Shown: piece after piece, positions 12,398 to 48,714 of the stretch
How the letters are laid out: the number at the start of each line of letters is the position of its first letter
Position numbering within the stretch: the stretch's first letter is position 1
Assembly (NCBI GenBank): GCA_002269645.1
Contig: NIVC01000084.1
Coordinates: 1-64,000, forward strand
Length of the DNA: 64,000 nucleotides
Direction: 5' to 3'
Source: Macrostomum lignano
Lineage: Eukaryota
The notes under the pieces: generated by a model
What the model was told of the DNA's origin: nothing
Database searches by the model: none
What the model saw: the letters and a program-made list of their open reading frames with translations, nothing else
Position numbers and translations under genes: made by a program

Positions 12398-15090
12398 TTA
12401 TTCTGAGAAAAATATTTCAAACGCGAGCATTCCGATTTCTCCACCGCACTTTTCTTTTCTGTTGCCGGGACAGTTCAAGTTGCAGTATCGCTTATTAGTT
12501 AAATAGTCCTCCTTAACGATCTCGTTGCCACAGTAACATTTTGTGCCATTAAGCAGTCCGAAAAAGCTAGCAGTATATTGCTTGTTGCAAATTCTGGCAC
12601 AGAATCTCTGATTCATGCTCACATCAGTGGCAGCCTGGGTGACTAGGATGTTGTTGGAGCCGTCGTCGACGAAGCAACCCACCATTGGTGCTGAAAATGT
12701 TAATCAGTTTAGGTTGCAAAAGACCAGTGTAGCTAGTGACTTTGTGGGGATGGGTGCATTAAGAAATGTTGCTAAGGAGAGAGGGTGCTGTAGGAAACGA
12801 TGCTGTAGGAGAGGGTGCTGTAGGATAGGGTGCTGTAGGAGAGGATGCTGTAGGAGAGGGTGCTGTAGTAGAGTGATGCTGTAGTGGAGTGATGCTGTAG
12901 TGGAGTGATGCTGTAGTGGAGTGATGCTGTAGTGGAGTGATGCTGTAGTGGAGTGATGCTGTAGTGGAGTGATGCTGTAGTGGAGTTGTGTTTCAACAAT
13001 AGCACGCGACGCACCAGGTATCATCAAGCTGGCAGTCCTAACTCCCTTGTAAATTTGCACATAACCCTTTCCGCCGCATGTTTCGGCGGAGCTGCCGGTG
13101 CAGATCGTTTTGCAAAAGGATGGTATAAGTTTGGGTGCCTTAATCCAGTTGCCGCACCAGCACTCTGAGCCCCTTTGTAGTCCGAAGTAAGCGTAGTCAT
13201 TCAAGGCGCATTGCTCAGCGCAGACGTCCGCAGTCATTTTGGATGAGTTGTCTACTTTGTCCTTTAATGGCGCTACTTGTGCGTATGGGGCTTCTGGGAA
13301 GCAGCCTTGGTACTGATCTGAAACAGAAGTAAATAACAAAAAGTGATAGTCTATGTGGCAAACCTTTTACTTCAGTATCGTCAGAACTAGACCCCAGAAT
13401 ATACATGACAATAATGCACTGGCGCACAGGGCATCCTCAATCAGCGAACTCAAAGACCAGTTGCACCTGCGTACTCTTCGGTAGCCTTTGAGATCCCCTG
13501 ATAGAACCCAATTGAACATGTGTGTGAATTCATCAAGCAGAGTATTCAACGGCAGAATCCGCCGCAGACAGTCGCTAAACTGCGAAAAGCTTTTGTTGTT
13601 GCGTGGTAGGAAATCCACACGATTTTTTCGACGCCTAGCTTGTTCTGGAAATGCTCGTCGAGTCAACGGCCATGTTACTTGCGATAGCAGGCTACACATG
13701 TCTCTGAAGCTCGATATGAACCATAGAGTTATGTGTTTTGACTCTACTCTTAATTTTCTCTCTGATTTTTCTTCTTTTTAGAGTGCTTGAGTTTTAAATG
13801 TTGCCAGTTTACTTCTAGAGAGAAATGATACACTTACAGTTTGAGTTGGTCTTGACTGAAATTGTTTTCGAATTGATTTTATTGCGGACCGGATGTAGCT
13901 CAAATGGTGATATTTTGTTAAGTATAGCGCATTTTGGATAACGTATTTAGCACCATGTCAGTCAGCGGTGGAAGAATTATCAAACTGCAGAATTAGAAGT
14001 GCGCTACACTCGCAACAAAAACATTCATTGAAAACTGGTTTCGGTTCAAAATACGCTAAGGAAATACGTATACACTGACCTTTTGCCGGAACCTTGCTTG
14101 TCCGTTTTATAGGCGTTTGGGCACATCAGACAAAACAAATGCTTGCTTTATTTGCAATCCACAAGCTCATAACGCGATATTTTGTAAATTTAAAGCTAAA
14201 AATAAAAAAGACTGGTTTTGCCTAATGCATTGTGAGCGAAAACCAGTCTTTAGCTTCAGTTGACCAACCTAAAAAATGTTTTTTAGGATTACTAGCAATT
14301 TTCGTCCCCAGTTGTAGAGGCAAGAAAAAGGAATTATGCCTGCAGTTTTTACTGTCAATATTGTTAGTTTTTTAGCTATCTAGCCTAAAATATCAGCATT
14401 ATCTTTAAGCTTTGTACTCAACGCCATTCATCACGCGTATCCCTATTAGCCAAAGTTTTTATCACTTCAGCCAAGAATACGTATCCTCATCAGCCAACGA
14501 AGTTTATCCAAATTAACCGACAAAATTCAATGTGAAGATTAGCCCAAACTGCCTAATTATAAAAGCAATAATTTCGTTTTTTGAGTAAAACGACTGTCCT
14601 TAACTGAACTGAGGTAACGCTGATTTATTCAGAGTGAAGCAAAAGGATAAAGCTACACAAATTCAACACAGCTTTCCGTTGCACAAAGTCTCACGGATGC
14701 ATTTTGGGCTAAATGTGCCAAAATAGTTATTTAGCTTGTACGAGCGTATGTTTAATCCTATGTGGACTCATGGCAGTTAATTACTCGCAGTTAAATGTGG
14801 AATTGTCAGCATCTGTAATCTTAAGGCACGATCTCTTTCCTCAAGTTGACCGTAGCGAAAACAAGACAGAAATGAAACTACGAACTACGAGCGTATGTAT
14901 CCATTTTGGCTTCTGTGGTGCAGTTTATGTATTTTATTCACGAGTGATTGTATTTAATTGTAGTTTTCCTGTGCATATGAATTAAAACAACAGTTGGTAA
15001 CTTACGGGACTCGACGTGTGTAAAGAAGTTGGCCAAGATGGCAGCGCTTATCAGCAAGACAGCAGTGCCCGTTGCTAAGGACCTCTGCAT
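12398..15090 (-). CDS. WSC-A: secreted protein, signal peptide + 2 WSC domains (~226 aa); exons 15090-15006, 13317-13015, 12690-12398
   Basis: Exon 1 is MQRSLATGTAVLLISAAILANFFTHVES followed by GTAAGT. Both introns are GT-AG phase 1 and the frame is continuous. Each domain has 8 Cys and a CxCG motif. Confidence 0.88.
12770..12985. repeat. compound minisatellite (15-bp GCTGTAGGAGAGGGT-like and 16-bp GCTGTAGTGGAGTGAT units) in WSC-A intron 2
   Basis: Direct tandem repeats; about 6 imperfect 15-mers followed by about 7 near-perfect 16-mers. Confidence 0.9.
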
Positions 15091-16479
15091 CGCTTGTTTG
15101 TCTGTTTATTAAAAAAATAGTTATTGCTGGTTAAAAAAGACTTGAAGATTTTTCATATCGAATGGTTCATGCTTTTCAGGTAGTTTGTATTGAGTTTTTT
15201 TTAGCAACAATGGAATGTGAATTTAAAGAAAAATTAACATTCTTTTCACTGAAAAAACTTCGATCTCGATTTAGCCACCAGTTTAACCGGAACATTCAGT
15301 TTGTTGAATGATACATTCTTGAGTTTAATACATGCAATAAATTACGATAAGTATTTTTAATACGAAAGCAATGTCTAAAATAACTATAATTGCAAAATTA
15401 ACGAGTTGATAAGATCAAATACAAGTTGCTGGGTGAATTCTTCCTTCTAAAATGCAAGACCGTTTTTGCTAGGCAAATTTCTGAGGGTAAACATTCGATC
15501 TAGTCAGTTGAACACAATGATTTTAGTGCTACACCATGGATTGACACCTGTGTTTTTCCATTCTCTGCAACTGTTAGGGGGGCTTTTTCGTAACGGAAGC
15601 GGTTTTACCTCTTAAAACCGCTTCTCGTGATGCGCAAGCAACAGGAGATGCGACCCAGAAAAATAAAGGCATGCAGTCAGGGTTCAAGTTTCCAGTCGGT
15701 CGCAAATTAAGAACTTATATACGAATAATAATAACTAACCTCAGCCTTCGCTGATCATTTTTTTCATATGGAAACAAACTCTTATTTTGAATAAATAAGA
15801 AGTACCTACAGCTCTAGAAACAACGTAAGTATATTTTGTGGTTTCGTCTTAGTATATTATATAAGTATATTAAAGCAAGTCTTTATTGTATCCTATCTTG
15901 TCCTGCCCTAAAACAGTATATATCACTAAGTCATGGTAGTGCTCAGCCTTACCCTTGATCCACCGGGTCAGTAGAAGCGATTTAAAGCAATGTTACAGCT
16001 GTGCTCTCTGTTAAAGGACTTTGGTCGTGGCACTCTTGTCAGCTCAAAAGACCGCTCGAAGCTGCTCCGAGTGTGCTGAGTCTAGCTGCTGTTCTACCCA
16101 GGCCGCCAGCGCCCACGCCTCGACTGTCTCGACAGATAGCAGGACTGTCTCGAGCACCGCCTGCCACAGCCTTCTGGTGGTCAGGCAGCGCTTCGGACTG
16201 AAGAATGGCCCTGATGGATCTGTATGCCTCCAAGGTGAGTCATCATCTGCTACTGGATGTTCCTCCTCTATGTGGGACACCACCAGACTTGACTTACTTG
16301 ACTTAGCTGCAGGGCTGTCCTGGAGGGGACACAGCGGAAAGGCGCGGACGCCCATTCCGCAAATCCCTGAACGGTATCGCTATGGACGAAGGGTTGGCGC
16401 CGCCCAGGGAGGTCCCCCAGTGTCGCCAGCAGCTATGGTGCCTTCTGGAAAGGAGAGTTCAGCCCTGCAGGTGGCCCGG

Positions 16480-17330
16480 AGGTAGCGCATGAGCTGGTTA
16501 AAGTTTTCGGGTTTGCACGCTTCAGTAATAGATGTGTGTGGCCCGAGGTAAGTGAGTCTGGCCCGCGTAAAGGCGGGACAGATGCTGACGAAATGCTCAG
16601 CGGTTTCATCACCTGAGCTGCAGAAACTGCAGATGGCGTTGGTGGCGTTGCCTTGCCGGTACTAGTGCCTGAAGAAGCAGCCGTGATCTGAGAGGATCAT
16701 GATGGCAGCCCGGATGTCTCTTCGCGAGAGGCGCGAGAGGAGTTTCCGGAGCTGGTGAGAGGGCTGAGGGACAGCCCCTCTGGATTGCCTGCAGGTAGTG
16801 CAGTTCGCCCAGGCAGAGCGATGCTGGGTCCTGATCCACGCTTTGATGCGCGAGTCGATGACACAGCCGGGAATCGGGACAAGGGGTTAGTTCGGGCCCG
16901 AGGGAGGAGCCGGAGGCACGAAAATGTTCAAGGGCGTCAGCCAACTCATTCTCTCGGATCCCCACATGTCCCGGAACCCACTTAAGGATAATTTTGTTGG
17001 TGGAACCCAATATTTTGAAGAGTTTGATACAGTCAAGGACTGTAGCAGAATTGGTACTACAGCCACTGATGGCGTGCAAGGCAGCTTGGCTTTCCGAATG
17101 GAAAATGATGTTCTTACCGGATACGCCAGTGGCGAGAAGCTCTGCAATGCAGGAGCTGATGGCGAGAACTTCATTTTGGAAGACACTGGAGTTGACCCCA
17201 GTGTACTGAGCGTGGGTTGCGATGACCCACCCGTTCAGGAAGATTCCAACACCAAAACCGGTGTTGGCTGACTGCTTAGAACCGTCGGTGTAGCAATGAA
17301 GCTCACCAAGGTTCGAGTGGTCATTGATGG
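16480..17330 (-). mobile_element. RNase H-containing LINE (I/R1-like) 3' fragment
   Basis: 'SSVFQNEVLAI...IIFHSESQAALHAI...KWVPGHVGIRENELAD' RNase H, followed by the C-terminal knuckle 'CSFCSSGDETAEHFVSIC'; contains stops and frameshifts. Confidence 0.85.
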
Positions 17331-18492
17331 TATCGTGCGAGTCGATAGCTACGGAGTAGCTTTGTCTCAGGTTGAGCGTTGAGGCACTTCAGCTAGGCCT
17401 TGACCCAACGCTGGGCTCACTTCACGTTTATTGCTTTTTGAAGAAGGCTGTTCGCGGGCGACAATCTCATGCTGACAGGAAAAAATCAACTGGGCCCAAA
17501 GATATAATCGACCCCAACGTTTTCTAGTCCAACGAAGAGACCTCGAGAAGAATCGCAAGGGTCCCACAAATTACCTGGCTGATATCAGCCGTAGGAAAAA
17601 TGCGCACAAAACTAATAGCTAAGCCAAAATTTTGATACCGACAGACAATTTAAAAAACATCACAAAGTTATTTTCATACGATAGAGGGTGATCTTTCGCC
17701 TTTTTTGGATTTCCCTGGGAAATCTGTATTTTTTAGATTTTTGTATGGCTCGTATGTCTATGGCCAAGCCAAATTTATGAAATTTAGTAAACGAATTCAA
17801 TTCGTGTTGGATATCAGGATAAACAAAAAAGTTGAAAAGAAAACTGGGAAGACCAATAACTTGTTCCTTAATTGAGAAACTCATAGCAGTATTTAGTTCA
17901 GAAAATTGTCCATTATTTGTAGTAAATGTTGAAGGTGCAGCCGCAGAGTTCTCCGTCTCCACTGAAGCCACTAGACGATGATAATGTTGCAGCAGACGAC
18001 AACGCAATCAGGCCATTGGCCGCAAGCACTGCACTGCCGCCTGCGCTGGTGCTCTGTCCACTACGACTGATCGCACCAGATATGTTGGACAGTCGTGACT
18101 TCTTCTTGGAGTATCGAATGTAGCGTTGCGTTGAAACGAACAGAACGATGACTAGTCACGTGACCAATATCCTTCATTTAAAATCCGGCATTGTGCAGCT
18201 CCGTGAAAACAGTCGCTCAATAAACAATAAACAATAAACAATGATAGTTTAAACAATGAGGTTTATGCCTCCTTGACAGTCCGGCTTTCTCCGAAATGGT
18301 CTGCATCATCGTGCCCAGTGTGTTGTGTCCAACAGCCTGCTTTCCGAAATACCACAAGTTTGATGTAGGTTTCGCCCAATTAAGCGCCGAACGACTGAAC
18401 TGCTCGTAACACCCAAGTGCTTAGCAGTCAAAATCTTCTTCACAAAATACTTTAATTATAAAACCAGCAGCTAAAGCAATTGGATAAGAAAC

Positions 18493-20100
18493 TGTCGTGC
18501 CGTGTAGTTGGCATAAAGAAACTTAAGGTTTATTTTAACTAGCAAGTAGCCTAATTAATATTGACACGAGCAGGTGCTGAGAGAACACGAAAATAGAGTC
18601 ACGTGATGACAATCAACTACGTACAAGTACATGGAAGCTTAGGGGCATGGCCAGTCAGAGCGAATGGAGAGGAAAGAATAGTGTGCACGTACGATGCACG
18701 TACATAGCATAAGTTAGTTAGTTAGTCAGTGCCTAGAGCTCAGCGCTCCGGCACCACATTCCGTCATCACCAACGAGCTGTCAAGCGATCAAGAGGAACG
18801 CCCTTGTTGCCGCGCTCGCTCCTTCTGGGCCGCGTATCAGCCGTATCGAGTTCACCGGCTTGGGGACGCTCAACAGTCGCTGACTCTCTCGAATCGTTAG
18901 ATGCGCCTCCGGGACGTCGAGCTCCGGACGGCCTCCGTCGGCTTTCGACCCGGCCGCGGCCAGAAGTGGCCAAAGCTGATCCCTGTGCGCCAGGACGGGC
19001 CGGTCCGACTCGGTCCGGGTGACGATCGCCGTGTTGTGCCCGGCCTGCACGACGAACTCGGCAAGTTCTGTCTGTGCGCTATGGCGAGCGTGGTAAACGA
19101 CCGGGGCGTCCGTCTCGAAGGTCAGCGTCAACGGACTTCTCAGCTGCCGACTCATCAGCGCCGAGGGGCTGCCTCGGCCGTCACTACGTGGAGTCGCTCG
19201 GTAGTTCAGCAGGAGCTTGGACAGGTATGCGTCAAAACGGTCCTTGATGAGCTGCAAACGCCTTGAGTCCTCGCTTGACAGTCTGCACCATCCGCTCGGC
19301 GCAGCCATTGGACTGCGGGTGGTACGGCGTGAAGAGCTGATTGCAGCCGATCCGCTCCAGCCAGCCTTTTTTATTTTTTTATTAGAGGCAGGGGGGTTGT
19401 GTGCACCCTGGCGCACTTTAAGCGACATTGTCACACAACCGGCGAGAGGCATTACTGCCCATTTCGCCGACTCCCCTGAGCAGGCATACAAGCGCGCGGA
19501 TACGTACGCAGGCACACACTCACACAGGAGTGTACAGCGGCCCTAACTTATTTTTATCGTTAGGCATGTACACTTCACTGCGATTTGGGGGTTGGCTCTC
19601 AAGGCCGCTAATTGCACGAGCAGAGCCAAGCCGAGATTCCAATTCAGCCCCAAACTAATGTGACTGCACTTGGAATCGAGCCTGGGTCGCTGGCACACCA
19701 GAGCCTGCGCTAGACCGCTGGGCTACGGCCCCCCTTCCAGCCAGCCTTGAAGCTCCTGATCGTGGAACTCGGGTGCGTTGTCAGACACCAGAGTGAGCGG
19801 CATGCCTTGCCTCGCGAGGATGGCCCGTAGAACTCGAATCACTGTCCTCGCGCTCTTGTCTGCCACTTGTACGTCTACCGGCCAGCCAGAGAAAGCGTCA
19901 ACCAGCACCAAAATCAGGCCGACTCCCAACACGTGAGCATGGTCCATGTGTACCCGCTTCCAAGGCGTCTCCTCGATAGGCCACGTGTGCACCGTGCGGT
20001 TGGGCAGTGGTCAGATCCTCGTACATGTCGTGCACTGCTTCACATACCGCTCAACATCATCGCAGTGCCCCGGCCACCATGCTTCGCGACTCACGAGCCA
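18493..20100 (-). mobile_element. 5'-truncated Gypsy element: integrase plus probable 3' LTR (18493-18758)
   Basis: 'WWPGHCDDVERYVKQCTTC' zinc finger, 'RVHMDHA..LVDAFSGW..LVSDNAPEF', 'YHPQSNGCAERMV'. The LTR is bounded by TGTGGTG/CACGACA and contains AATAAA. Interrupted by a SINE. Confidence 0.85.
19369..19735 (-). mobile_element. complete tRNA-derived SINE (family 1) with poly(A) tail and 13-bp TSD
   Basis: A box TAGCCCAGCGG, B box GGCTCGATTCC, A-rich tail at 19369-19385, TSD TCCAGCCAGCCTT (19356-19368, 19736-19748). The head is nearly identical to 63846-64000. Confidence 0.92.
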
Positions 20101-26596: not shown

Positions 26597-27710
26597 TTAG
26601 GATTCTGTTGGAACTAAATCAAATATCTCAATTGCTAGTGGTCCTCCACATGTTTGTCCGTATTCGGCATTCTGACATTGCTGGTTACAAAATCTTTTCG
26701 CCATCGGATTTCCATTAAGTATTTGATTGCCACAGTAGCATCGGTTGCCGTTTGCTAGACCAAATAATTTTCTGTAGATTTTAAAACAACTTGAAGCACA
26801 TTCTTTTTGGTTCATGACTTGGAAATTCTTTTTTACTTCTTTATGTAGCACCCTTTCCGTAGGGGACCAAAAAAAGCATCCTTTTGACGGTGCTGAAATA
26901 GCGAAATGGAGCGCGACTCAATATAATTCTTTTGGCGGCTCACTTGATACTTACTAGATGACATGTAGTAAGAACATCTCAACTTACCTGGCACCAATGG
27001 AATGGTAACACCTGTCACCTTGTAGACGCTCATAACATTCAAACCACCACATCTTGTCTCTTGTTTTCCACTACATCTTTGATTGCATCGATAGCGAGGC
27101 ACTTCAATACTATGGAGTTCGTTTCCACAAAAGCATTGATTTTTGGTTATTCCAAAAAACTTTTGATCCATAACTTGACAATTTGGCAAACAGAGATAAG
27201 GAGCCATTTTAGTGAAGTTTTGGCTAAAAAATTTTAGCGCCCACTGATCATTAATACGATGCACAAAGCAACCCACATAGTTTTCTGAAATGTTTTTATA
27301 GATTAGAGACGTATTTACTCAACTGTGTCATATACTCACACAGTTACATAAAAAACTGCATTTAAACAAACTACTAAAATCTGACTTAGCCAGCAAAAAA
27401 AGCGGGAAGAAGACCCAGGCAGTAGACGTCGTCGCGGCTTGCGATTTAGTTTAATAGTGCAATAGTGGGTACTTGATAATCAGTGGTTTTCAAGCTTTAA
27501 TACAAAAAGTTGGATGAGTACAAAGAATGGGTAAAAGGGTAAATGGGTAAAAGAAAGCGCAAACTTCAGCATTACTACCTATGTAAAAATTCGAATATTC
27601 ATTACGTACGTAGTATAACAACTCATACAAACACTGAGTCTCTCACCATTAGCTACGAAGACTCCCTCAACAGCAACGAGAAGAATCACACCGAAAGTAA
27701 TGTACAGCAT
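26597..27710 (-). CDS. WSC-B: signal peptide + 2 WSC domains (218 aa); exons 27710-27647, 27284-26988, 26892-26597
   Basis: Exon 1 MLYITFGVILLVAVEGVFVAN; phase-1 GT-AG introns; 8 Cys per domain; AATAAA downstream (~26530). Confidence 0.92.
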
Positions 27711-28379
27711 GATTGCCTTTTGGTTCAATCGTTTAATAAAAAATTATTTCAGCAGCATCGAGGCGTCAACTCTTTTATGGAAAAATTTTGAATTTAAATT
27801 CTTAAAAATATTTGTCTCACGTGGCACACGTGATAGTTCTACGTTAAGAGTGCCACGAAGAAATCGATTTTGAATTTAAAATATCTCAATTTTTCTCGTA
27901 GCTAAGTAACTTTTTCCTATCTCTTCAATTGGCATGTGCATTTCTTTTAGAATATGTAAAGTCACTTCTAATAAAAAATTCAAATTCCATTTAAATTCCA
28001 TAAACTTGCATAACGTTACATGCAGGTTTTTGTAAAATTTTCATTTAAAACAATTTTTAGGAATTTTTATAACAATCGTATTTGATTGCTTTATACGAGC
28101 TAAGATGATTATTATTTCACTTTTTCACTTCAAAATCTGTTGTGTTATGTTTATATTTATATTTTAGCTGAGTAAATACATAACTTTATCTCTCAATTTG
28201 AAAATTAAATAAAACATTTAAAAACTCAACCACATCTTGAATAGGCCCTGATTTCTTGCATAAAAATGTAAAGATCCACAGATTTGTGTAAAAATAGTAA
28301 AAGCTTTTTTTTCGTCATTAATTTTGCCTCAGCTAGGTGTAGCGACTTCAGTTGTAAGGCCACATCGTCACCTCTAAGT

Positions 28380-28639: not shown

Positions 28640-31600
28640 CAAAGTGGAAACTGGAGTTCAACTAGAGTCGGTGGAAGGGCAAACTTTTGCGGGCAGACAC
28701 AACATGTTGCATAGGCTCGCAACACTAAATTCAGCATTCAAATTCAGCTGGAACCAGCCAGGCACACGATGGACAGTAGCAATAACGTTTTGCTTCAGTC
28801 AAAGCAGAGTAACAGGTTTCAGCAACTGCAGAAACCGGGGCTTCCTGAAAGACGGCGACCGGCAGTTGTGCAGCTGACCGCAGCAACCTCCTTGTGATGC
28901 AGCACTTGATGAAGATGCTGTCATTAGCAGTGAGAGTAATAGGGCATAGTGTACGCTGTGTACCTCTGGGTGGCGTGTGTACATTAAAGGGGGTTGTTGC
29001 AAATGGCAAATAAGATAAATATGCGCGTTGTAAGTCGGCACTTGTGCTAGTATTGACAAACTACGCGTTTTCAAGTCTTCACATCGGTGGCAGCGTGTTA
29101 TGTCCAGTGACGAGTCGTCCCCTGCGCTACGCCAGTCGCGTGAGTGCAGGCTGAATCGCAGTTTTGGTGAAGACGTGTCCCTGCCAGCTTGGATTGCGTT
29201 CCGAGAGCATGTGGGCCTAGTCATTAAGGCCAACACTATGGGTGGCCACAAGCAGTGGAGTGACCCAGAATTTGTGGCGGTGCAAAACCGGCTGCAGCTG
29301 AAGGGGGAGACCGAGCTACTGGTCTGCAGGCAGCGTCGGCGAAGGAGCCTTGGGTTGATAATAGCGATGAGCTGCTCAAAAAACTGGCGGAGCGCTATGA
29401 GACGGGACAAGGCGTGGAGGTGGCGATCCAGAATTTCGAGAGTGCTGCGCAGCTGAATATTGAGACTTTGGAAAAATTTTTGACTCGGCTCCGGCGGTTG
29501 GGAGCGAGTGCTTTCCATCACGATTCGGCGGACACGTTGAGGTCCCGCGTTCTGTGAAAGTTCATATCGAATATCCAAAAATGCAGAAGTACGCAAGGAA
29601 GTGCTTCGTCAGGGCTGGATGCAATCAGACGGACGGGCGGCAAAGACCTACGACGAAGTTTTTAAGGTGGCCAAAGCAGCGGAAGCGATGCTGCGGGTCG
29701 GTTGTGGCGTTGAAGTGGCGGAACCGTCCGGGATTGTGGCCGCAGTTGAAGCCCTGACCCAGAGGGTCAACAGCTTGACTGGCCGCCATGGACAGCGCCC
29801 AACGACGGCGCGGGCGACGGATGGACGCGTTGACTGCTGGTACTGCCGCTGCACCCATCGCGGGGGATAGCAAAAGTGCTTCAAGCGACTGAGGGAGAAT
29901 CCAAGCTGGCGGCCGGCATCGGCACCTGAGAGAGCGAATCCGGTGAGTGCAGAGGGGATGTCTGGGGTTCATATTATGGCTTTTAACGATGTTGGGGCAT
30001 GCATGATTCTTCGTTTGTCCGGTTTGAGAGCTCACCCGGCTGGAGCATGATTCGGAGCCCTTACGCGGACATCCGCATGGGCAATAGGTCGGTGATAAGC
30101 TTAATTGACACGGGGGCCGACAACAGCATCATTAGTGAAGAGCTGAGCAAGCAGTTGGGGGCACAATTACGAGCGTAGTAAACCACTTGCCACAGACATC
30201 GTTGCAGAGTGTGAACGGAGGACTGTTGAGTCTTAGGGGCGTGGCTATTCTGCCAGTTGATATTGGTGGTCGGACGTTAGAGCATGAGTTTTTGGTGGTC
30301 AGCAACATGGTGGTTCCGTCGATTGTTGGAGTGGACTTGCTTTGTAAGCTGGGAAACTTGACTTTTGATCTTAAAAAAACTCAACGCTTACTATTGACGC
30401 AACGCATCAAGTCGTCCCTCTGTTGAAGTCTCCGAGTCGGCAAGGCTTTGATTCCTGCATGCTATTGACGGCGGAAAAGACGTCGCTGCCGCCGAGGACA
30501 GAGGCTCTAGTCGAGTGTCATGCTTCTCACTTGAGTGCCGGTCTGGCTTACTTGGTTGAGGACGACGACGAAAATGATTCTGCGTTGACGGTCGCAACAT
30601 CGGTTGGCTGTGGGCTTGATGGAAGGGTAGCGGTCCTTCTTCGGAATGGGTCTGACGATGTTGTCGAGGTGCCATCCGGCGTTCCCGTTGCCCGAGCTTA
30701 TGCAGTGGCGTCAGTGAGCTTGGTCTCGGCGAAAACAACAAGGTCACCACCTGCGAAAGGGAACGTTTCCTACAAGGTGAACCCAGATCTCACAGGTTAG
30801 CAGCAAGAGAAAATTAATGCTCTCTTAGAAGAGTTTGATGACGTGATGTGGAAGGAGGGCGAGAGCTTACCGTTAGTCGATGTTGGGGTGCAGCACGTAA
30901 TACGGCTGAAACCAGAGGCCGTCCCCTTTCACGCAAAAGCGCGCCAGCTCTCTCCCACTGAGGAAGGGGAAGTGCGGCGTGAAATCGAGAAGCTAGTGGA
31001 CACTGGGCTGATACGGCCGAGCTCGTCACCCTGGGCCGCTCCGATCGTCTGCGCCAGGAAAAAAGATGGACGGCCCAGGCTTGCCATAGACTATCGAGGG
31101 CTCAATGCCCGGTCTCTACCTAACACCATGCATCCACTGCCGCACATCGAGGATTTGATTGACAGGCTAGGGGAAGGTCGCTATTTCTTGACGCTGGATG
31201 CCAAGTCCGGGTACTATCAGATGCCGCTGAGGGACGAGGATAAGCATCTGACGAGCTTTGTGGTACCATGGGGTCAGTATCACTGGGAGCGAGGCTGTCC
31301 GTTTGGGTTCTCGGGTATGCCGTCCAGTTTTCAGCGGCTAATGAGCGTCGCTTTGGGGGATCTCTTATGTTTAGGGACGCATTGTGCTACATGGATGACG
31401 TTTTCTGCTTTGGGCGGACCTGGTCGGAGCACATGAAAAGGTTGCAGAGAGTTTTGGAAAGAAATCGGGAATCCGGAATGAAAATGGCTACGGAAAAGTG
31501 CGTCTTTGGGGTCACGGAAATTAAGTACCTGAGGCACGTGGTGAGCAACGGGCGGGTAGCCATTTCTCCGAATAGAGTCGAAGCTCTGAAAGACGTTCCG

Positions 31601-34600
31601 CAGCCGAATAAAGCTGGCGAACTGCAGAAAGCTTTAGGTGCCTTCGGTTTTGTTCAGAAGTGAATTCCGGGTTACGCGGATCTCACCAAGCCGTTTCATG
31701 CCATGCTGCGGCGAGCGAAGAAGAATGACACCCTTCAATGGACGCCGGCGAGCGAAAAGGCGTTTTCGGAAATCAAAAGTAGCCAAGCCTCAGCCGTCTT
31801 TGAAAATTCCTGATTTTGACCGGCGTGTGACGCCAGCAAGAACGCAACTGGGGCGCTCCTGGCGCAGAGGCTCCCCGATGGTACCTTGGATCCGATAGGT
31901 TTTTATCATTACACTCTGAATAAGGCGGAGCAGAATTACTGCACGACGGATCGGGAGCTCCTTGCTATCGTGAAGGCTGTCAAACGTTTCCGGCTGTATT
32001 TGGTCGTTTGACCTTATCACAGACCATCGACCGCTGACTTACCTGCACAATTTAGACATACAAGATCCTCAAGGCAGACGCGGTCGCTGGGTAGAGCGAC
32101 TTCAGGGCTATGATTTTACTCCCATCTACAAGGAGGGCAGGAGCCCGGAGCTGAGCATGGCAGACTTTCTGTCGCGGTTGACAGTAATGGGCAGGTGCGA
32201 CGTGGGGGGGGGGTACTCCCGGGACAGCGCACGCGGCTGGCGTGCTTGCAGTACAGTGGGAACCGGCGCAGATTGCCCAGGAGCAAGCCAATGATCCGGA
32301 GCTTGCCAGGCTCCATGAAGAGGCCCGCAGAAGTTGGAGGTGGGGGCTGATGGAGTCCTCCGTTATCTTAACTTCAAGGGGCGTAGTTGCATGGAAAACA
32401 AGTTTGGTCGGATGCTGCAGAAACTTGTGGTGGTACCAGTTAATCGGCGAAAAGAGCTGTTGCGGGTCTCACATGACCACGAGTTGAGTGGGCACATGGG
32501 TGTCACTCGTACGTGGCACCACTTGTAGTCTCTAGCTTGGTGGCCACAGATGAAAAACGACGTAGAGGAGTATATTCGGTCGTGCGATCTCTCTTTGGCT
32601 TTAAAAGACCAAAGCATCTAGAAGTGCCACCGTGGCAGCCAACAGACGTTCCTTCTCGCCCATTAGAGAAGCTTCAAGTGGACTTTTGTAAGCCATTGCC
32701 CACGGCGGTCGATGGCAGTCGCTATTTTTTGGCGATTCAGGATGTCTTCTCGAGGTACACCGTGTTCGTACCGACCGCAGACTCTACGGCAGCAGCCGCG
32801 GTCAGTGCCATCGTTGACGGCTGGCTTCCGACGTTTGGGATCCCTAACGTCATTCAGTCAGACAGAGGGACTCACTTCACGAGCAGCGTCTTCGAGCAGA
32901 TGTGCGCCGAGCTGGGAGTGCGGCAGGTGCTCAGCTCCCCCGAGCATCCGGAGTCCCAAGGTCAGGTGGAACGGCAAAATCAGCTTTTAGATAGCGTGCG
33001 AATGTTGGTTGACTCGGATAGGGCTGCTTGGCCTCAGAATTTGCGCTCTGTGCAGTTTGCACATAACTCTGCGCCAAATCAGACGACTGGTTTCAGTCCG
33101 CACGAGATTTTGTTCGCTACCTCAGCCTTTCGGCCGGAAAACATCTTGATGCAGCGGTTGACGGGAAAGGAGAAGGGGAGGAAGGCACCCGCATGCAGCA
33201 ACACGGTTGTGCTCCGCAAGTTGCGCTCCCAAATGAAGGTTGCCGATTTTGTGCGCCGGCAGATTCTAAAGGCCCAGTCTGACAGGCGTGAGTGCCAGAA
33301 GGCCACGGCGGAGCCCTTTGCTTTGGGGCAGTTGGTTCGGAAGAAGCTCAGCACCGCGGAAAGGGGGCGTACGGGAGGAAAGCTTGCTGCTTTCAAGTCG
33401 AAGAGCAAGTACCGGGTGGTGGGCCGGAACGGGTGGACGTATCGTCTCACACCAGAGGGAGGCAACGCGGTGATTTTCCGGCACCACAACCGCTTGGAGC
33501 GGGCACCGAAGAGCAGTCGGTTTCATTCACAGACAAAGTTGACAGTACCGGAAGGGGGTCGAAAAGGGGAAGCCACACAGGAACACGCACCGAGCTCGGA
33601 CATAAACACAAGTGATTCCGAAGCAAATGACGATCTTGGGGACGCTCGCACGGTGAGAATCGCTGAGGCTGCCGCACCCTCCTTTTCAGATCTCCGGCGG
33701 AGCCGACGGACCAGCCAACAACGCCAGCTACTTCAAGTGAACCCGATCGGGACCAAGCGGTACCACGAGGCGCCCCCCCGGCGTCGGATATTGATTAACA
33801 GTACCCGAATTTCCCTGTTTCGGTGACGCTTTGGCAATGCAAGCGTATAATACTGACATGAAAGTTCGAGTCTTTTTTGAGGGGAGGAGTGTCATGAGCA
33901 GTGAGAGTAATAGGGCATAGTGTACGCTGTGTACCTCTGGGTGGCGTGTGTACATTAAGGGGGGGTTGTTGCAAATAGCAAATAAGATAAATATACGCGT
34001 CTCGGCTTGTAAGTCGGCACTTGTGCTTGTATTGACAAGTCTTCACAATGCCAACAGCATCAAAATCGCACTTCAGGTAGCACCAGTCAAAACCAACCGG
34101 TCACGCAAAATAGCTGTCGCTCTCACTAGGCAGGCGTCCGTCTCCATGGCAACTGGTCTCCTGCCCGTGGGCCAAATCTCACTACCTCGCTGCTGCCGCA
34201 ATGCCACCTTCCACCAGCCGAGGATGCTCTTCAACTGGTCATCCACCGACAGCCGATCCTTTGGGCTTGACAGGTTGTCGACGTGGTCGATCAAGTCGCG
34301 CAAGAACGGCCGGCCGTTGCCGATCACTTGGCAGGCCCAGTTGAGCTTGCCCACCAGCTTCTGCAGCTCATGCTTGGAGATCCGCCGCATCGCACAGCAC
34401 TGATCAAGGCTGACCGCAGCTCTTCCACTTTGGATCCTGCCAAGCTCATGAGTCCTGATAGAGCATTGAATTGAATGCCTAGGAAGCACATTTCCTGAGT
34501 CGACTGCACACACTTCTTCCAGTTAACAGTCAGGCCCAGCCTCTGCACGAGCTGCATCAGCTCCGTGTAGAAATACCGGCAATCAGTCAGCAACCCCGCG

Positions 34601-37119: not shown

Positions 37120-38801
37120 TTAGACCTTTATAAGGACTAAATCGAATATCTCAATTCCCAATGATCCTCCACATTTTAGACCGTATTGGGCATTTTGACA
37201 TTGCTGGTTACAATAATATTGGGTCACCGCAGTTGCCCTAATTATTTTATTGCCACAGTAGCATCGGTTGCCGTTTGCTAGACCAAATAACTTTGCGCTT
37301 TTTTTAAGGCAGCTTCTGGCACAATTTTCCTGGTTCATGACTGGGAAATTTTCTTTCATTTCAGAATCTAGCACCAGTTCAATGGGGTCCCACAAAAAGC
37401 ATCCCCTTGAAGGCGCTGAAATGGCGAAACATAAGCGAGAAAAAAAATTTGGCGGCTAGCTAACTTGACACTTACTAAATGACATGATGTAGTTAAAAAA
37501 CTGTTTCACTTACCTGGCACCAATGGAATGGTAATGCCTGTCACATTGTAGACGCTCATAGCGTTCAAACCACCACATCTTGTCTCTTCTTTTGCACTAC
37601 ATCTTTGATTGCATCTGTTTGGTGTAATTTTCAGAGTTAAGAGATCGTTTCCACAATAGCATTTATTTTTGGTTATTCCAAAAAACCTTTTTCCCAAAAC
37701 TTGACAATTGGGCAAACAGAGGTAAGGAGCCATTCTAGTGGATTCTTGACTAAAAAATTTTAGAGCCTCGGATTCGCCTCTCTTGTGCACAAAGCAACCT
37801 GCATAATGTTCTGAAATGGTTTGATAGATTAGAGACGTATTTAATCAACTTGTTTATAAACTCAGTTACAAACTGAGTTACAAACATTTACTAAAAGCTG
37901 CCTTAGCCAGCAAAAAATTGGAATGAAGACCCAGACAGTAGACGTTGTTGGGGCTTGCAATTTGATTGAATAGTGATTGGGGGGTACTTGATAGCAAGTG
38001 ATTTCCAAGCTTAAGCATAAGGATGAGCATAAAGAAAGAGTAAATAAAAAGGCAAAAAGTTGGACGTCGGGCAGACCAAAAGGGTTCTACACTTTGATCT
38101 GTAAACACCCCCTTCCACACAAGCTGCTATGTAGAGATAGCTATAGATTGTGGCCTATTTAACTGATCTACGAGTATTTATGGGCTGGGGCATCAAATGG
38201 CTGGGAACTTACTGATTTGATCTGAAATTAAGGTGGAAATTTATTACTTTTGAAAAATGTAGATTCTCATTACATAAAGTTTACAGGCCACGTGCAAAGC
38301 CTCTCTGTATGGCCCTCGGGCCCTTTAAAACTTCACAATAGCAATCCAGCCCGCCAATATTTATACTCTTCTCTCTAATCTCCTCTCTCTTCCTTTCATC
38401 TCCTCGCCTCTCCTCTTTTCTCTCTTCTTTTATTCATCACTCCTCTCCTGTCGTCTCATTTCTTCTCATTTATTCACTCGCCTCTCTTTTCTCATCCCCC
38501 CTCTATCTTCTCTCTCCCCTCTCCCCTCCCCCCCCCCAGCCCGCAGCCATGCTCTATAGGCTATCTATCTGCCCCTTGAGGTAAAAACGTCAAGATCACG
38601 ATCTCAGGCGTGCTTTGGCTTATTCAGTACTTACTGAATTCGGCTGAAATTTAGTGCGCAAACTTAGCATTAATTAAAAAATAGAATAGCTTCATGTACG
38701 TGCGAATTATAACAACCCAAATCAAAACAGAGTCTCTTACCACCGGCAGCGAAGACGCCCGGAGCAGCAACGAGAATAATCATAGCGAGAGAAAAATACA
38801 T
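37120..38801 (-). CDS. WSC-C: signal peptide + 2 WSC domains (217 aa); exons 38801-38741, 37810-37514, 37415-37120
   Basis: Exon 1 MYFSLAMIILVAAPGVFAAG; phase-1 GT-AG introns; 8 Cys per domain; TATAAAA at 38884-38890 on the minus strand. Confidence 0.92.
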
Positions 38802-39439
38802 ATTCTTTTTTGCTTGGGATATTTTTATTAGACTTTATAGAGTTCGTCGAAAATTTGATTCGGCAGTCCCGTAGGTTTCATTCTTTTATAGAAAAGAATT
38901 CCTGAAAATATTTTGCCACGTTGAATTTAAAAAATTTAAAAAATTCAACAGTCAAATTTTTTCTTGTAATTAATTTAATTTTTTTACTTTTTTTGAGCCT
39001 CTCATTTGGAATTTAAAATGCTTTTAGTATATACGCTCGCAGTTGAAGTAATCTTGCAATGTAAAAGCAAATTGCCATTCAAATTCCATTCAAATTTACA
39101 AACTTCGGTTTTTCTAAACTTTTCGTTTTTGAACGACAAATTTTTTATTAGGAATTCTATATTTTTTGCATTACTTAGTTTTAACTTTTTTAGGAAACTT
39201 CCGTAATAAACTTTCAACTCATTTTTTAGCTGGTTGAGTTTATAATTTCAGCCTCCGTTTCAAAAATTAAATGAAGAATATCAAATTATAATTATGTTAT
39301 TCACATCTTACATAACAAAAGCATAAAATACCTCTATACCTATACCTATGATAAAGTCATCATTTTTCATAGATCATAGGTTTTTCTCAAGCTAGGTTCA
39401 AGCTTGATTCAGTTGGAGGGCCAATATGTCAGCTCTGTG

Positions 39440-39835: not shown

Positions 39836-39838
<3 letters not shown>

Positions 39839-44499: not shown

Positions 44500-44600
44500 C
44501 ACGAGAGGCCAACTGCCCAGAGCACACAGAGTGTACATGTTTGATGATTTGAAAGTCAGAGCCGATGTATATCCTGTACTGGGCATCACTGATTGCCTCT
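44500..44600 (+). mobile_element. fragment of the SINE family 1 central domain
   Basis: The reverse complement matches 59765-59810 (CCCTGACTTTCTAATCATCAGGCATGTACACTCT). Confidence 0.5.
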
Positions 44601-46886: not shown

Positions 46887-46959
46887 ATTTATTTCTGAGA
46901 CCTGAGGCCCGAAGGCTTCCCCACAAGGGGGCCGAAAGGTCGAAACCCATCACATAAAT
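46887..46959 (+). ncRNA. hammerhead-like structured motif with a branched stem II region (degenerate)
   Basis: ATTTATTT-CTGA-GACC...GGCCGAAAGGTC-GAAAC-CC-ATC-ACATAAAT: stem I 7/8 bp, internal hairpins GAGGCC(cgaa)GGCTTC and CCC(acaa)GGG; the CUGANGA core is incomplete. Confidence 0.4.
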
Positions 46960-47167
46960 GGTTGATATTATTCCTGGCCTATAATTATTAAAAAAGAGTT
47001 GCAAAATAAGATATCCCAGAGGAAAATTTGATAGCTGCTATTTTTATGCAGATCTTAAATAATTTCATTGAATGCTGTTCATGACGTTTTAACTTTTCAT
47101 TTTATTATCAGTTATTGGGATTAAATTTACTGTCAAGTTTAGCTTTAGTTGATCGATTGAGTTTGAT

Positions 47168-48714
47168 TTAGATCTGTATTTTAACTAAATCGAATATCTC
47201 AATTCCATATTCTCCTCCACATTTTTGTCCGTATTGCGCATTCTGACATTGCTGGTTACAAAACTCTTTGCTCACTGGACTTCCACGCGCTATTGTATTG
47301 CCACAGTAGCATCGGTTGCCGTTTGCTAGACCAAATAATTTTTTTCGCTTTTCAAGGCAACTTCTAGCACAATTGTCCTGGTTCATGATTAGAAAATTTT
47401 CTTTGACTTTTTCAGTTAGCACGCCTTCAGTAGGAGACCAATAAAAGCATCCCTTTGAGGGCGCTGAAATGGCGGCATAAAAGTGACTCCGTATTTTTGC
47501 AGCTTACTTGACATTTACCAAAAAAACAGCTCCACTTACCTGGCACCAATGGAATGGTAAGCTTTGGCACTTTGTAGATACTAATGAAATTGCTACCACC
47601 ACATTCTGCCTCTTTATGTGCACCACATCTTCGATTGCATCTATTGAGACCTGAAGCTGGATGACTGTAGATTTCGTTTCCACAAAAGCATTGATTGTCG
47701 AATATTCCGAAAAAATTACTCTCAAAATATTGACATTTTGGCCAACAGAGATTAGGTTCCATTTCAGTATTTCTATGACTCGAAAATTTTAGAGCTCTAA
47801 ACCCATTTGAATTAAAATAGCAACCCACGTAGTCTTCTGAAATGGTTTGATTAATTACAGACATATTACCCTCAGCTGTGTTCATAAAGTACGAGTAACA
47901 GTTAAAAAGCTGCTGCATTTAAGCAAACTAAGAAATCCGGACGAAGCCCAGGCAACAGGGCGTTGTTGCGGCATGCAATTTGTTTTATTAGTGATTGTGC
48001 GCATTCGATAATCAGTGATTTTTCAAGCCTAAAGTGAAGCATTGAATGCGCGTAAAGAAAGGGGGAAATAAAAAGACAAAAATGTACGTTATACGAATCT
48101 AAAAGGTTATACGAGCGTACGAACGTATTTACACCGAGCCGTGAACAACTTATGCGGCAAATTGTCATAGGGAGAGACTGTAACGTTGCGTATTAATGTT
48201 CTATTTAATGCTAGTGCAGTAAATGAATAGAAACTTACCGCTTGGATCTGAAATGAAGGTGGGAACTCAAATTTTTTTTACGTATTTTTGTAAATTTCTA
48301 ATTCTCGTTAACTACAAATGTGAGCAAACCATTGGCATATTTAGCTGCGAACAGATAGATAAAATCGTTTTACTTTTTTGGATATAAAGCTTAACAAGTT
48401 TCAATATCAACTCAATGAAGATTCTCGTTTCAAAGGCTAAAAACAGCTGAATTCTTGTACAAAAATGTTTATTGGCAACGAAACTTCCTATACCTAGTTA
48501 ATCTAGATCTTAGAAGTGAATTGTAGTATTCGGTACTCACGGAAGTTGGCTGAAATGAAGGGCGCAAACTTCAGAATTATGTTAAAGTTTTTAAATGACT
48601 ACACATCAAAAAGCCATTCTCTGAGTAGCTCGTAATACACAGAATCTCACCATCGTCTCCAAAGATGCCTGGAGCAGTAACGAGAAGAGTCAGAGCGAGA
48701 GTATGGAACAGCAT
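47168..48714 (-). CDS. WSC-D: signal peptide + 2 WSC domains (218 aa); exons 48714-48651, 47836-47540, 47463-47168
   Basis: Exon 1 MLFHTLALTLLVTAPGIFGDD; phase-1 GT-AG introns; 8 Cys per domain; AATAAA at ~47101-47106. Confidence 0.92.

What the first reader, a model, noticed from the sequence alone, without database searches (positions are those of the whole stretch)
12398..48714. Tandem family of four intact secreted double-WSC-domain genes with rapidly diverging surfaces
Seen: four minus-strand genes share one design (signal-peptide exon plus one exon per WSC domain; all introns phase 1; B, C and D have identical 297/296-nt domain exons). All 16 cysteines are kept in every copy while inter-cysteine residues differ strongly, and all four remain stop-free despite being embedded in dead transposons. 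Established: WSC is a carbohydrate (glucan/xylan)-binding module, usually attached to enzymes or membrane stalks. Inference: free, minimal two-WSC proteins in an expanding array may form an undescribed lectin-like repertoire (microbial or algal glycan recognition, mucus/adhesive, or reproductive secretion) under diversifying selection.
Basis: partly seen in the sequence, partly recalled or inferred. Interest (0 to 1): 0.75.

Follow-up and report, generated by a model that had tools for sequence, protein, structure and literature searches.

The report
Flatworm prostate two-WSC seminal protein genes
The four genes are real and intact, but they belong to a family already described in the flatworm Macrostomum lignano: small secreted proteins with two WSC domains made in the prostate gland, two of which are the published seminal-fluid candidates Mlig-pro5 and Mlig-pro28.

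Summary
The window is Macrostomum lignano DNA. It carries four intact minus-strand genes, each encoding a signal peptide and two WSC domains with 16 cysteines, about 10 kb apart among broken retroelements.

One correction: the three-exon design is true only for gene B. Genes C and D each have two extra 9-nt micro-exons, and gene A has one of 18 nt. All are phase 1.

The family is not undescribed.
- Gene C is transcript RNA815_80.4, also called Mlig-pro5 (397/399 nt identity, both primers exact). It is prostate-gland-specific, was annotated in 2015 with two WSC domains, and has been tested by RNAi.
- Gene D is Mlig-pro28 (RNA815_19361): both primers are exact and the 251-nt product length matches.
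- About 27 of the 76 published prostate-limited transcripts have WSC-type BLAST hits.

Diversifying selection is not shown. Pairwise dN/dS among B, C and D is 0.5-0.75, up to 0.9 for D's first domain. Loop-specific tests were not significant.

New here: the tandem-array layout, the micro-exons, a shared upstream motif and a retroelement missing from the second assembled copy.

Glycan binding and transfer to the mating partner are untested.

The parts
12398..15090 (-). Gene A (232 aa). Exons: 15090..15006 (signal peptide), 13855..13838 (18-nt micro-exon encoding LKTNSN), 13317..13015 (WSC1, 303 nt), 12690..12398 (WSC2, 293 nt).
   Evidence: Pfam WSC on both domain exons. The spliced product matches annotated M. 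lignano protein P0004 (BOX15_Mlig003972g1) at 231 of 232 residues. About 31% identical to B, C and D. Expression site unknown.
26597..27710 (-). Gene B (218 aa). Three exons: 27710..27647, 27284..26988 (297 nt), 26892..26597 (296 nt). No micro-exons.
   Evidence: 99% identical to P0001 (BOX15_Mlig020751g3). The structure model of P0001 has two WSC folds. Intron 1 lacks the roughly 570-nt segment that carries the micro-exons in C and D.
37120..38801 (-). Gene C (223 aa), identical to published transcript RNA815_80.4 / Mlig-pro5. Exons: 38801..38741, 38643..38635 (9 nt), 38221..38213 (9 nt), 37810..37514 (297 nt), 37415..37120 (296 nt).
   Evidence: 397/399 nt identity between the published transcript fragment and the spliced model including both micro-exons. 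Both primers are exact, and the spliced amplicon of 557 nt equals the published probe length.
47168..48714 (-). Gene D (224 aa), identical to published Mlig-pro28 (RNA815_19361). Exons: 48714..48651, 48549..48541 (9 nt), 48247..48239 (9 nt), 47836..47540 (297 nt), 47463..47168 (296 nt).
   Evidence: Both Mlig-pro28 RNAi primers match exactly (47742-47765 and 47439-47460). The spliced amplicon of 251 nt equals the published length. The micro-exons are inferred from conservation with C, splice sites included.
27805..27822 (-). Conserved upstream motif ACGTGNNA(N)AAATAYTTT, gene B copy, about 95 nt upstream of the ATG.
   Evidence: The motif occurs only three times in the 64-kb window, each time upstream of B, C or D; 0 hits on average in 200 shuffles.
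38905..38921 (-). The same upstream motif, gene C copy.
48818..48835 (-). The same upstream motif, gene D copy.
28918..34048 (+). Retroelement of about 5.1 kb between B and C. Its reverse transcriptase is split over two frames (30843-31436 and 31268-31663); its integrase ORF is 32513-33826.
   Evidence: Pfam RVT_1 and rve hits. The element is absent from the otherwise 91-97% identical locus L001 in GCA_002269645.1. No long terminal repeats were detected.
16609..19992 (-). Retroelement debris between A and B: an RNase H fragment (16609-17079) and an integrase core fragment (19723-19992).
12799..12986 (.). 16-nt minisatellite, 12 copies, inside the intron between the two WSC exons of gene A.

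Best explanation
The locus is a tandem array of four paralogous genes of the Macrostomum lignano prostate-gland two-WSC family.

Shown:
- Each gene encodes a protein of about 220 aa: a cleavable signal peptide, a short linker encoded by micro-exons (absent in B), and two disulfide-rich WSC modules (8 cysteines each) joined by a conserved (L/I)(V/I)PAPxxGC hinge.
- There is no membrane anchor and no catalytic domain.
- Gene C is Mlig-pro5 and gene D is Mlig-pro28. Both are published, in situ-validated, prostate-limited transcripts whose expression changes with social group size.

Inferred:
- The proteins are packed into prostate secretory granules and delivered with sperm through the stylet into the partner's antrum.
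- There, the two WSC modules act as a bivalent lectin. They would bind or cross-link glycans on sperm, on the ejaculate matrix or on the antrum epithelium, and so influence sperm storage or displacement and the partner's post-mating responses.
- The array grew by duplication of a unit holding the promoter, the gene and the 3' UTR. The copies then diverged under weak constraint everywhere except the cysteine/glycine/aromatic scaffold, while retroelements filled the spacers.
For: Species and gene identity:
- B is 99% identical to an M. lignano protein.
- C matches RNA815_80.4 at 397/399 nt with exact primers and a 557-nt amplicon.
- RNA815_80.4 is Mlig-pro5, and both Mlig-pro28 primers match D with a 251-nt amplicon.

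Expression and phenotype (literature):
- RNA815_80.4 is tail-specific by RNA-seq and confined to prostate gland cells by in situ hybridization. RNAi abolishes staining by the prostate antibody MPr-1. It was annotated with two WSC domains (PMC4490696).
- The Mlig-pro set is defined by plastic, prostate-limited expression and is numbered by expression level (PMC5977470).
- RNAi of Mlig-pro5 raised P2 (paternity share when the male mates second) from 0.67 to 0.85, unadjusted p = .03. RNAi of Mlig-pro28 raised partner offspring from 4.54 to 5.50, unadjusted p = .017. Neither survived FDR correction (PMC6953679).

Domain and fold:
- Pfam WSC on all eight exons.
- The AlphaFold model of the 99%-identical B protein has pLDDT 82 and matches the yeast Wsc1 domain 7PZ2 (target-normalised TM-score 0.77, rmsd 2.1 A), Kremen and a glyoxal oxidase WSC domain.
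- The sequence profile hits the same PDB entries.

Secretion:
- Hydrophobic N-termini, no later hydrophobic segment, and a polyadenylation signal right after each stop codon.

Family context:
- About 27 of 76 prostate-limited transcripts have WSC-type BLAST hits.
- Further M. lignano two-WSC paralogues exist.

Shared regulation:
- A motif unique in the window lies upstream of B, C and D.
Against: - Prostate expression is documented only for C and D. A and B did not match any of the 18 primer pairs I could obtain, and A lacks the shared upstream motif.
- No carbohydrate-binding assay and no proof of transfer to the mating partner exist for any member.
- The RNAi phenotypes are weak, run in unexpected directions, and are not significant after correction.
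- Loss of MPr-1 staining could be indirect.
- WSC domains can also mediate protein-protein contacts, as in Kremen and in Wsc1 clustering (from my own knowledge).
Confidence: 0.8

Rival explanations
1. The proteins are structural or packaging components of prostate secretory granules, or of the ejaculate matrix or plug. They would have no signalling or lectin action on the partner.
For: Mlig-pro5 ranks fifth in expression among the 76 prostate transcripts. Its RNAi removes the MPr-1 prostate antibody signal. The fitness effects of knock-down are weak.
Against: Knock-down worms keep normal prostate gland shape and normal accumulation of secretory granules. A purely structural role does not easily explain many divergent paralogues with dN/dS of 0.5-0.9.
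Confidence: 0.2
2. The proteins are antimicrobial or immune lectins that protect the ejaculate and genital tract. They would bind fungal or algal beta-glucan, chitin or xylan, as fungal WSC modules do.
For: The closest sequence relatives outside flatworms are fungal and bivalve WSC proteins, including small fungal two-WSC proteins and oyster proteins annotated 'putative fungistatic metabolite'. WSC modules with known ligands bind cell-wall polysaccharides (from my own knowledge).
Against: Expression of the Mlig-pro set responds to social group size, that is, to sperm-competition level. That points to a mating role rather than an infection response. No infection data exist.
Confidence: 0.15
3. 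The proteins are mucus or adhesive-gland lectins, or general epidermal secretions. This is one of the reader's other options.
For: Only the architecture: a secreted, cysteine-rich, carbohydrate-binding module.
Against: In situ signal for RNA815_80.4 is confined to prostate gland cells. The Mlig-pro set excludes transcripts with adhesive-gland or other tail patterns.
Confidence: 0.03
4. The array is decaying duplicated DNA: pseudogenes among transposons, kept open by chance.
For: The surroundings are transposon-rich. dN/dS is high, and differences between the two assembled copies of B and C are mostly nonsynonymous (at least 9 of 10).
Against: All frames, splice sites, 16 cysteines and polyadenylation signals are intact in all four genes. 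C and D are abundantly transcribed. dN/dS for B versus C is significantly below 1.
Confidence: 0.02

Closest known systems
Mlig-pro5 (RNA815_80.4) and Mlig-pro28 (RNA815_19361), prostate-limited putative seminal fluid proteins of Macrostomum lignano (Arbore 2015, PMC4490696; Weber 2018, PMC5977470; Weber/Patlar 2019, PMC6953679)
   Same: They are the same genes as C and D. Published features: two WSC domains, prostate-limited expression, RNAi phenotypes.
   Different: The papers work from transcripts. They do not describe the genomic tandem array, the exon and micro-exon structure, neighbours A and B, or the transposon context. PMC6953679 even calls Mlig-pro5 'currently unannotated'.
Other WSC-type Mlig-pro transcripts, e.g. 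Mlig-pro46 (RNA815_16008.2), Mlig-pro63 (39357), Mlig-pro4 (15018.1), Mlig-pro11 (15432.2)
   Same: Same species, same gland, WSC-type BLAST hits, and transcripts of about 0.5-1.1 kb. Mlig-pro46 is described as WSCD2-like, and its knock-down lowers P2 (paternity share of the second-mating male).
   Different: They are different loci: none of their primers match this window. I could not obtain their sequences, so their relationship to A and B is unknown.
Small secreted fungal WSC proteins, and WSC modules of fungal enzymes (glyoxal/copper-radical oxidases, glucanases); PDB 9N3U
   Same: Signal peptide plus tandem WSC modules with no other domain occurs in fungi too: P0008, P0009 and P0012, at 228-276 aa. 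The fold is the same.
   Different: Only 22-30% identity. The fungal proteins act in cell-wall or plant-polysaccharide biology, not in an animal reproductive gland.
Yeast Wsc1 cell-wall stress sensor (cysteine-rich domain, PDB 7PZ2)
   Same: Best single-domain structural match: target-normalised TM-score 0.77, rmsd 2.1 A, with the same eight-cysteine scaffold.
   Different: Wsc1 has one WSC domain on a Ser/Thr-rich stalk, plus a membrane-spanning helix and a cytoplasmic tail. None of these is present here.
Vertebrate WSC proteins: KREMEN1/2 (kringle-WSC-CUB, PDB 5FWS) and WSCD1/2 (WSC plus sulfotransferase)
   Same: The WSC fold. The M. lignano literature uses WSCD2 as the named homologue.
   Different: No kringle, CUB, sulfotransferase or membrane-spanning region here; Pfam finds only WSC. 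The similarity is at domain level only, not orthology.
Lectin-type seminal fluid proteins of other animals, e.g. Drosophila C-type lectins CG1652/CG1656 and Acp29AB, and mammalian spermadhesins (from my own knowledge)
   Same: Functional analogy: small, secreted, carbohydrate-binding accessory-gland proteins that evolve fast and occur as duplicated genes.
   Different: The folds are unrelated. The analogy is a working model, not a tested similarity.

Membership tests
WSC domain (Pfam PF01822) | Profile HMM score above the curated gathering threshold | tested here: met
   All eight domain exons score 40.7-63.1 bits against a 27.8-bit cutoff.
WSC domain (Pfam PF01822) | Eight conserved cysteines per domain | tested here: met
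   16 invariant cysteine columns across A-D and P0003.
WSC domain (Pfam PF01822) | WSC (PAN/apple-like) three-dimensional fold | tested here: met
   The AlphaFold2 model of P0001 (99% identical to B) has mean pLDDT 82. Foldseek matches 7PZ2 (target-normalised TM-score 0.77), KREMEN1 and 9N3U, then the apple domains.
WSC domain (Pfam PF01822) | Carbohydrate binding | not testable with these tools
   Needs recombinant protein and glycan arrays.
M. lignano prostate-limited transcripts (Mlig-pro1-76, putative seminal fluid proteins) | Sequence identity to a published Mlig-pro transcript or its primers | tested here: met
   Met for C (Mlig-pro5: 397/399 nt, primers exact, 557-nt amplicon) and D (Mlig-pro28: primers exact, 251-nt amplicon). 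Inconclusive for A and B: only 18 of the 76 primer pairs were available and none matched them.
M. lignano prostate-limited transcripts (Mlig-pro1-76, putative seminal fluid proteins) | Prostate-limited in situ hybridization signal and socially plastic expression | not testable with these tools
   Taken from the literature for C and D. No data for A and B.
M. lignano prostate-limited transcripts (Mlig-pro1-76, putative seminal fluid proteins) | Secretory signal peptide and no membrane anchor | tested here: met
   Hydrophobic N-terminus (peak 19-residue Kyte-Doolittle hydropathy 1.64-2.34) and no later segment above 1.35. SignalP itself was not available.
M. lignano prostate-limited transcripts (Mlig-pro1-76, putative seminal fluid proteins) | Transfer to the mating partner in the ejaculate | not testable with these tools
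   I found no proteomic or imaging evidence.
Schistosome-type micro-exon genes (MEGs) | Symmetric micro-exons (length a multiple of 3, same phase at both ends) after a signal-peptide exon | tested here: met
   9-, 9- and 18-nt exons, all phase 1 at both ends.
Schistosome-type micro-exon genes (MEGs) | Most of the coding sequence built from micro-exons | tested here: not met
   Micro-exons contribute 18 of about 670 coding nt; the rest lies in two exons of about 300 nt. These are not MEGs.
WSCD1/WSCD2 (WSC plus sulfotransferase) | Sulfotransferase domain and membrane anchor | tested here: not met
   Pfam finds only WSC, and the protein ends a few residues after WSC2.
Wsc1-type cell-wall sensors | Ser/Thr-rich stalk, membrane-spanning helix and cytoplasmic tail | tested here: not met
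   No hydrophobic segment after the signal peptide; the stop codon lies in the WSC2 exon.

The most novel reading that the evidence does not exclude
Two-WSC proteins may be the dominant glycan-binding class of Macrostomum seminal fluid. On this reading, the loops between the fifth and sixth cysteines are recognition surfaces driven by sexual conflict; in WSC2 this loop is also where three of the seven amino-acid differences between the two assembled copies of gene C fall. A variable set of symmetric micro-exons after the signal peptide would add N-terminal variation by alternative splicing, as in schistosome micro-exon genes. The array would then be a flatworm counterpart of the lectin gene clusters of insect accessory glands.
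Probability: 0.2. Interest if true: 0.55.

Novelty: already known. Interest (0 to 1): 0.3.

Why it matters
The locus gives a genomic anchor to a well-studied model of sexual selection in hermaphrodites. It shows that two RNAi-tested seminal-fluid candidates, Mlig-pro5 and Mlig-pro28, are neighbouring paralogues. They sit in one array with two untested relatives and share a candidate regulatory motif.

This bears on the weak, hard-to-interpret single-gene RNAi phenotypes, where redundancy among paralogues is a likely cause. It suggests combined knock-downs and family-wide evolutionary tests. It also provides correct gene models, micro-exons included, for probe, dsRNA and antibody design.

It does not reveal a new kind of system.

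Tried and rejected
- **Structure prediction on the spliced window proteins.** I used the 99%-identical database protein P0001 instead.
- **Tests for positive selection.** Bootstrapped pairwise NG86 dN/dS and loop-versus-rest contingency tests gave no significant excess of nonsynonymous change. A versus B, C or D is saturated at synonymous sites. No site-model software was available.
- **Comparison of the two assembled copies (window versus GCA_002269645.1).** Ten differences in all across B and C: both B differences are nonsynonymous, and C has 8 nt differences giving 7 amino-acid changes (dN/dS 1.9). These are too few for a test.
- **Long terminal repeats for the retroelements.** None of 80 nt or more found.
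- **Locus L003 (the A orthologue).**
- **The all-library HMM search.** It returned mostly long multi-WSC proteins from fungi, bivalves and protists, without names. It was useful only for finding one more M. lignano subfamily.
- **Literature searches.** Gene-model IDs, and 'WSC domain' together with 'seminal fluid', returned nothing. 'Micro-exon gene' together with 'Macrostomum' returned nothing that looked relevant from titles and abstracts.
- **Readings considered and rejected.** WSCD2 orthology, a Wsc1-like sensor and a schistosome-type micro-exon gene were each rejected on tested features (see the membership tests).

Full report
**1. What is in the sequence**

The window is AT-rich eukaryotic DNA with patches of GC-rich transposon sequence. 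Eight minus-strand ORF pieces between 12.4 and 47.9 kb each hit Pfam WSC (PF01822). They score 40.7-63.1 bits against a 27.8-bit cutoff.

Reading the DNA and locating splice sites gives four genes:

| Gene | Exons (minus strand) | Protein |
|---|---|---|
| A | 15090..15006, 13855..13838, 13317..13015, 12690..12398 | 232 aa |
| B | 27710..27647, 27284..26988, 26892..26597 | 218 aa |
| C | 38801..38741, 38643..38635, 38221..38213, 37810..37514, 37415..37120 | 223 aa |
| D | 48714..48651, 48549..48541, 48247..48239, 47836..47540, 47463..47168 | 224 aa |

- All introns are phase 1 with GT/AG ends.
- B, C and D share 297-nt and 296-nt domain exons.
- Each product has exactly 16 cysteines in aligned columns.
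- Each has a hydrophobic N-terminus and no later hydrophobic segment.
- An AATAAA signal lies 36-72 nt after each stop codon.
- A tblastn search found no further WSC domain anywhere in the window.
- B, C and D recur at 10.5-kb and 10.0-kb spacing.

**2. Correction to the gene design**

The 'signal-peptide exon plus one exon per domain' design holds only for B.
- C carries two 9-nt micro-exons.
- D carries the two homologous ones. Their exon sequence, acceptor (tttcag) and donor (gtaagt/gtgagt) are all conserved.
- A carries one 18-nt micro-exon.
- B has lost the roughly 570-nt intron segment that holds them.

**3. Identity**

Gene B is 99% identical to Macrostomum lignano protein BOX15_Mlig020751g3. 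Gene A matches BOX15_Mlig003972g1 at 231 of 232 residues, including the signal peptide I had predicted independently and the micro-exon residues LKTNSN.

A literature search for M. lignano plus WSC led to two papers.
- Arbore et al. 2015 (PMC4490696) describe transcript RNA815_80.4. It is tail-specific by positional RNA-seq and confined to prostate gland cells by in situ hybridization. Its RNAi abolishes staining by the prostate antibody MPr-1, and it was annotated with 'two WSC carbohydrate binding domains'.
- Their supplementary table holds the first 399 nt of the transcript and the primers.

The fragment matches my spliced model of gene C at 397 of 399 positions, but only when both micro-exons are included. 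Both primers match exactly. The spliced amplicon is 557 nt, the published probe length; without the micro-exons it would be 539 nt.

The primer table of PMC6953679 equates RNA815_80.4 with Mlig-pro5. It also lists Mlig-pro28 (RNA815_19361). Both of its primers match gene D exactly, and the spliced product is 251 nt as published.

So C is Mlig-pro5 and D is Mlig-pro28. None of the other 16 primer pairs matches the window, so A and B are not among the 18 RNAi-tested transcripts.

**4. What is already known about these genes**

Weber et al. 2018 (PMC5977470) defined Mlig-pro1-76 as transcripts with socially plastic, prostate-limited expression, numbered by expression level. Mlig-pro5 is therefore among the most abundant.

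Their BLAST table shows that about 27 of the 76 rows, from 18 transcript clusters, hit WSC-containing proteins.
- Thirteen rows name WSC outright.
- The rest hit 'fungistatic metabolite', oyster 'plasminogen' EKC22375, oyster LOC105345065 or fungal glucanases. The first three are also hits of RNA815_80.4, and the glucanases are, from my own knowledge, WSC-bearing enzymes.
- That these rows match through the WSC domain is my inference.

The paper summarised them as 'fungistatic metabolites or transmembrane receptors'.

In PMC6953679:
- Mlig-pro5 knock-down raised P2, the paternity share of the second-mating male (0.85 versus 0.67, unadjusted p = .03, adjusted .24).
- Mlig-pro28 knock-down raised partner offspring number (5.50 versus 4.54, unadjusted p = .017, adjusted .10).
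[quoted passage not shown] Mlig-pro5 is called unannotated.

The family is thus described, though never laid out as a genomic array or as one family.

**5. Fold and relatives**

A profile of the family hits the yeast Wsc1 cysteine-rich domain (7PZ2), KREMEN1 and a glyoxal oxidase (9N3U) in the PDB.

The AlphaFold2 model of the 99%-identical B protein has mean pLDDT 82, with domain blocks near 90. It shows two alpha/beta modules. Its best Foldseek matches are the same entries (7PZ2: target-normalised TM-score 0.77, rmsd 2.1 A), followed by apple/PAN domains.

Beyond M. lignano, the nearest sequences are fungal WSC proteins, including small two-WSC ones, and bivalve multi-WSC proteins. M. lignano has further paralogues:
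- P0003;
- a WSC2-WSC2 variant, P0005;
- A-like single-domain forms, P0006 and P0007;
- the Mlig011934/Mlig016501 subfamily, two members of which (P0171, P0173) lie on the contigs that carry the A and B/C orthologues.

**6. Evolution**

Protein identity is 63% for C versus B, 56% for C versus D, and 31% for C versus A.

| Pair | dN/dS (NG86) | Bootstrap 95% interval |
|---|---|---|
| B-C | 0.52 | 0.34-0.80 |
| B-D | 0.75 | 0.51-1.19 |
| C-D | 0.70 | 0.48-1.05 |

- For WSC1 in comparisons with D, dN/dS reaches 0.84-0.90 with intervals spanning 1.
- dS of about 0.4 equals the intron K2P distance of about 0.3-0.6.
- Half of the aligned positions are invariant among B, C and D, more in WSC2 (61) than in WSC1 (44).
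- The least conserved stretches are the loops between the fifth and sixth cysteines of both domains (33-36% identity), the loop between the seventh and eighth cysteines of WSC1 (38%), and the stretch between the first and second cysteines of WSC1 (48%).
- pN/pS in the loops between the fifth and sixth cysteines is 0.7-1.5 against 0.5-0.8 elsewhere, but no contrast is significant (p of 0.25 or more).

Against the GCA_002269645.1 assembly, B differs by two nonsynonymous changes and no synonymous ones. C differs by eight nucleotides giving seven amino-acid changes, all in WSC2, three of them in the loop between its fifth and sixth cysteines.

The picture is weak constraint on everything but the scaffold. 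Positive selection is possible but not demonstrated.

**7. Surroundings**

The spacers hold reverse transcriptase, integrase and RNase H fragments in broken frames.

A retroelement of about 5.1 kb at roughly 28.9-34.05 kb is missing from the otherwise 91-97% identical copy of the locus in GCA_002269645.1. There, B and C lie 23 kb apart rather than 10 kb, and no D copy lies within 10 kb upstream of C. The array is therefore structurally polymorphic between haplotypes or subgenomes.

A motif, ACGTGNNA(N)AAATAYTTT, occurs exactly three times in the window. Each copy lies about 95-120 nt upstream of the ATG of B, C or D, just before a TATAAAAG-like box. None is expected by chance. A lacks it.

**8. 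Mechanism and verdict**

Shown:
- gene structures, domain family and fold;
- secretory design;
- identity of C and D with prostate-limited transcripts.

Inferred:
- export in prostate granules and transfer in the ejaculate;
- bivalent glycan binding in the partner's antrum or on sperm;
- redundancy among paralogues as the reason for weak single-gene RNAi effects.

Rival roles (granule matrix, antimicrobial lectin) remain open. The adhesive/mucus and pseudogene readings are rejected for C and D.

The finding is a correct observation of a gene family that the M. lignano community already knows as WSC-type seminal-fluid candidates. The array layout, the micro-exons, the shared motif and the retroelement difference between the two copies are incremental additions.

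Noticed in passing
window 38635-38643, 38213-38221 (C); 48541-48549, 48239-48247 (D); 13838-13855 (A): Symmetric phase-1 micro-exons of 9, 9 and 18 nt lie between the signal-peptide exon and the WSC1 exon. Their number varies among paralogues: B has none, and P0003 and P0171 carry extra residues at the same place. This resembles the micro-exon genes of schistosomes, another flatworm group. Whether they are alternatively spliced is unknown.
   Followed up: partly
window 27805-27822, 38905-38921, 48818-48835 (minus strand): The motif ACGTGNNA(N)AAATAYTTT occurs only three times in 64 kb, each time just upstream of a TATAAAAG-like box of genes B, C and D. It is a candidate prostate-specific regulatory element. 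Oddly, the published transcript RNA815_80.4 starts at 38896, upstream of the TATA-like box of C.
   Followed up: partly
window about 28918-34048, compared with L001 8364-8943: A retroelement of about 5.1 kb (frameshifted reverse transcriptase, 437-aa integrase ORF) is present here but absent from the 91-97% identical locus in GCA_002269645.1. In that assembly B and C are also 23 kb apart instead of 10 kb. The array is structurally polymorphic.
   Followed up: partly
window 37120-37415 (gene C, WSC2 exon), compared with L002 10320-10615: The two assembled copies of gene C differ by seven amino acids from eight nucleotide changes, all in WSC2 and none in WSC1. Three fall in the loop between the fifth and sixth cysteines, which is also hypervariable between paralogues. 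The published reverse primer matches the window's version.
   Followed up: partly
window 12799-12986: A 16-nt minisatellite (GATGCTGTAGTGGAGT, 12 copies) sits in the intron between the two WSC exons of gene A. It creates long spurious ORFs.
   Followed up: no
window 52532-54150 (+): Probable GT31-type galactosyltransferase gene. One ORF carries an N-terminal membrane anchor (52532-53185) and the next carries a Pfam Galactosyl_T domain (53281-54150, E = 1.8e-20). It is the nearest non-transposon neighbour of the lectin-like array.
   Followed up: partly
window 55653-62120: ORFs at 56387-56854 (-), 58071-58667 (-) and 60888-62120 (+) share 'APRVRPEA..ETA' and 'RNRG' motifs and have no Pfam match. 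Between them, 58929-59780 is a long minisatellite that reads as HTHTQSHAYSYTISRILIHNL repeats. This may be an inverted duplication of an unknown repeat-protein gene.
   Followed up: no
P0005 (BOX15_Mlig001653g2), not in the window: This M. lignano paralogue has two copies of the WSC2-type domain and no WSC1-type domain. It shows domain-level reshuffling, consistent with the shared phase-1 exon boundaries.
   Followed up: no
PMC5977470 Table S1: Besides WSC, the prostate-limited transcript list holds several fibrinogen-related/ficolin-like entries (RNA815_9549.x, 11128.1, 14220, 50917). Lectin-like domains as a group dominate the annotated part of the M. lignano seminal-fluid candidates.
   Followed up: no
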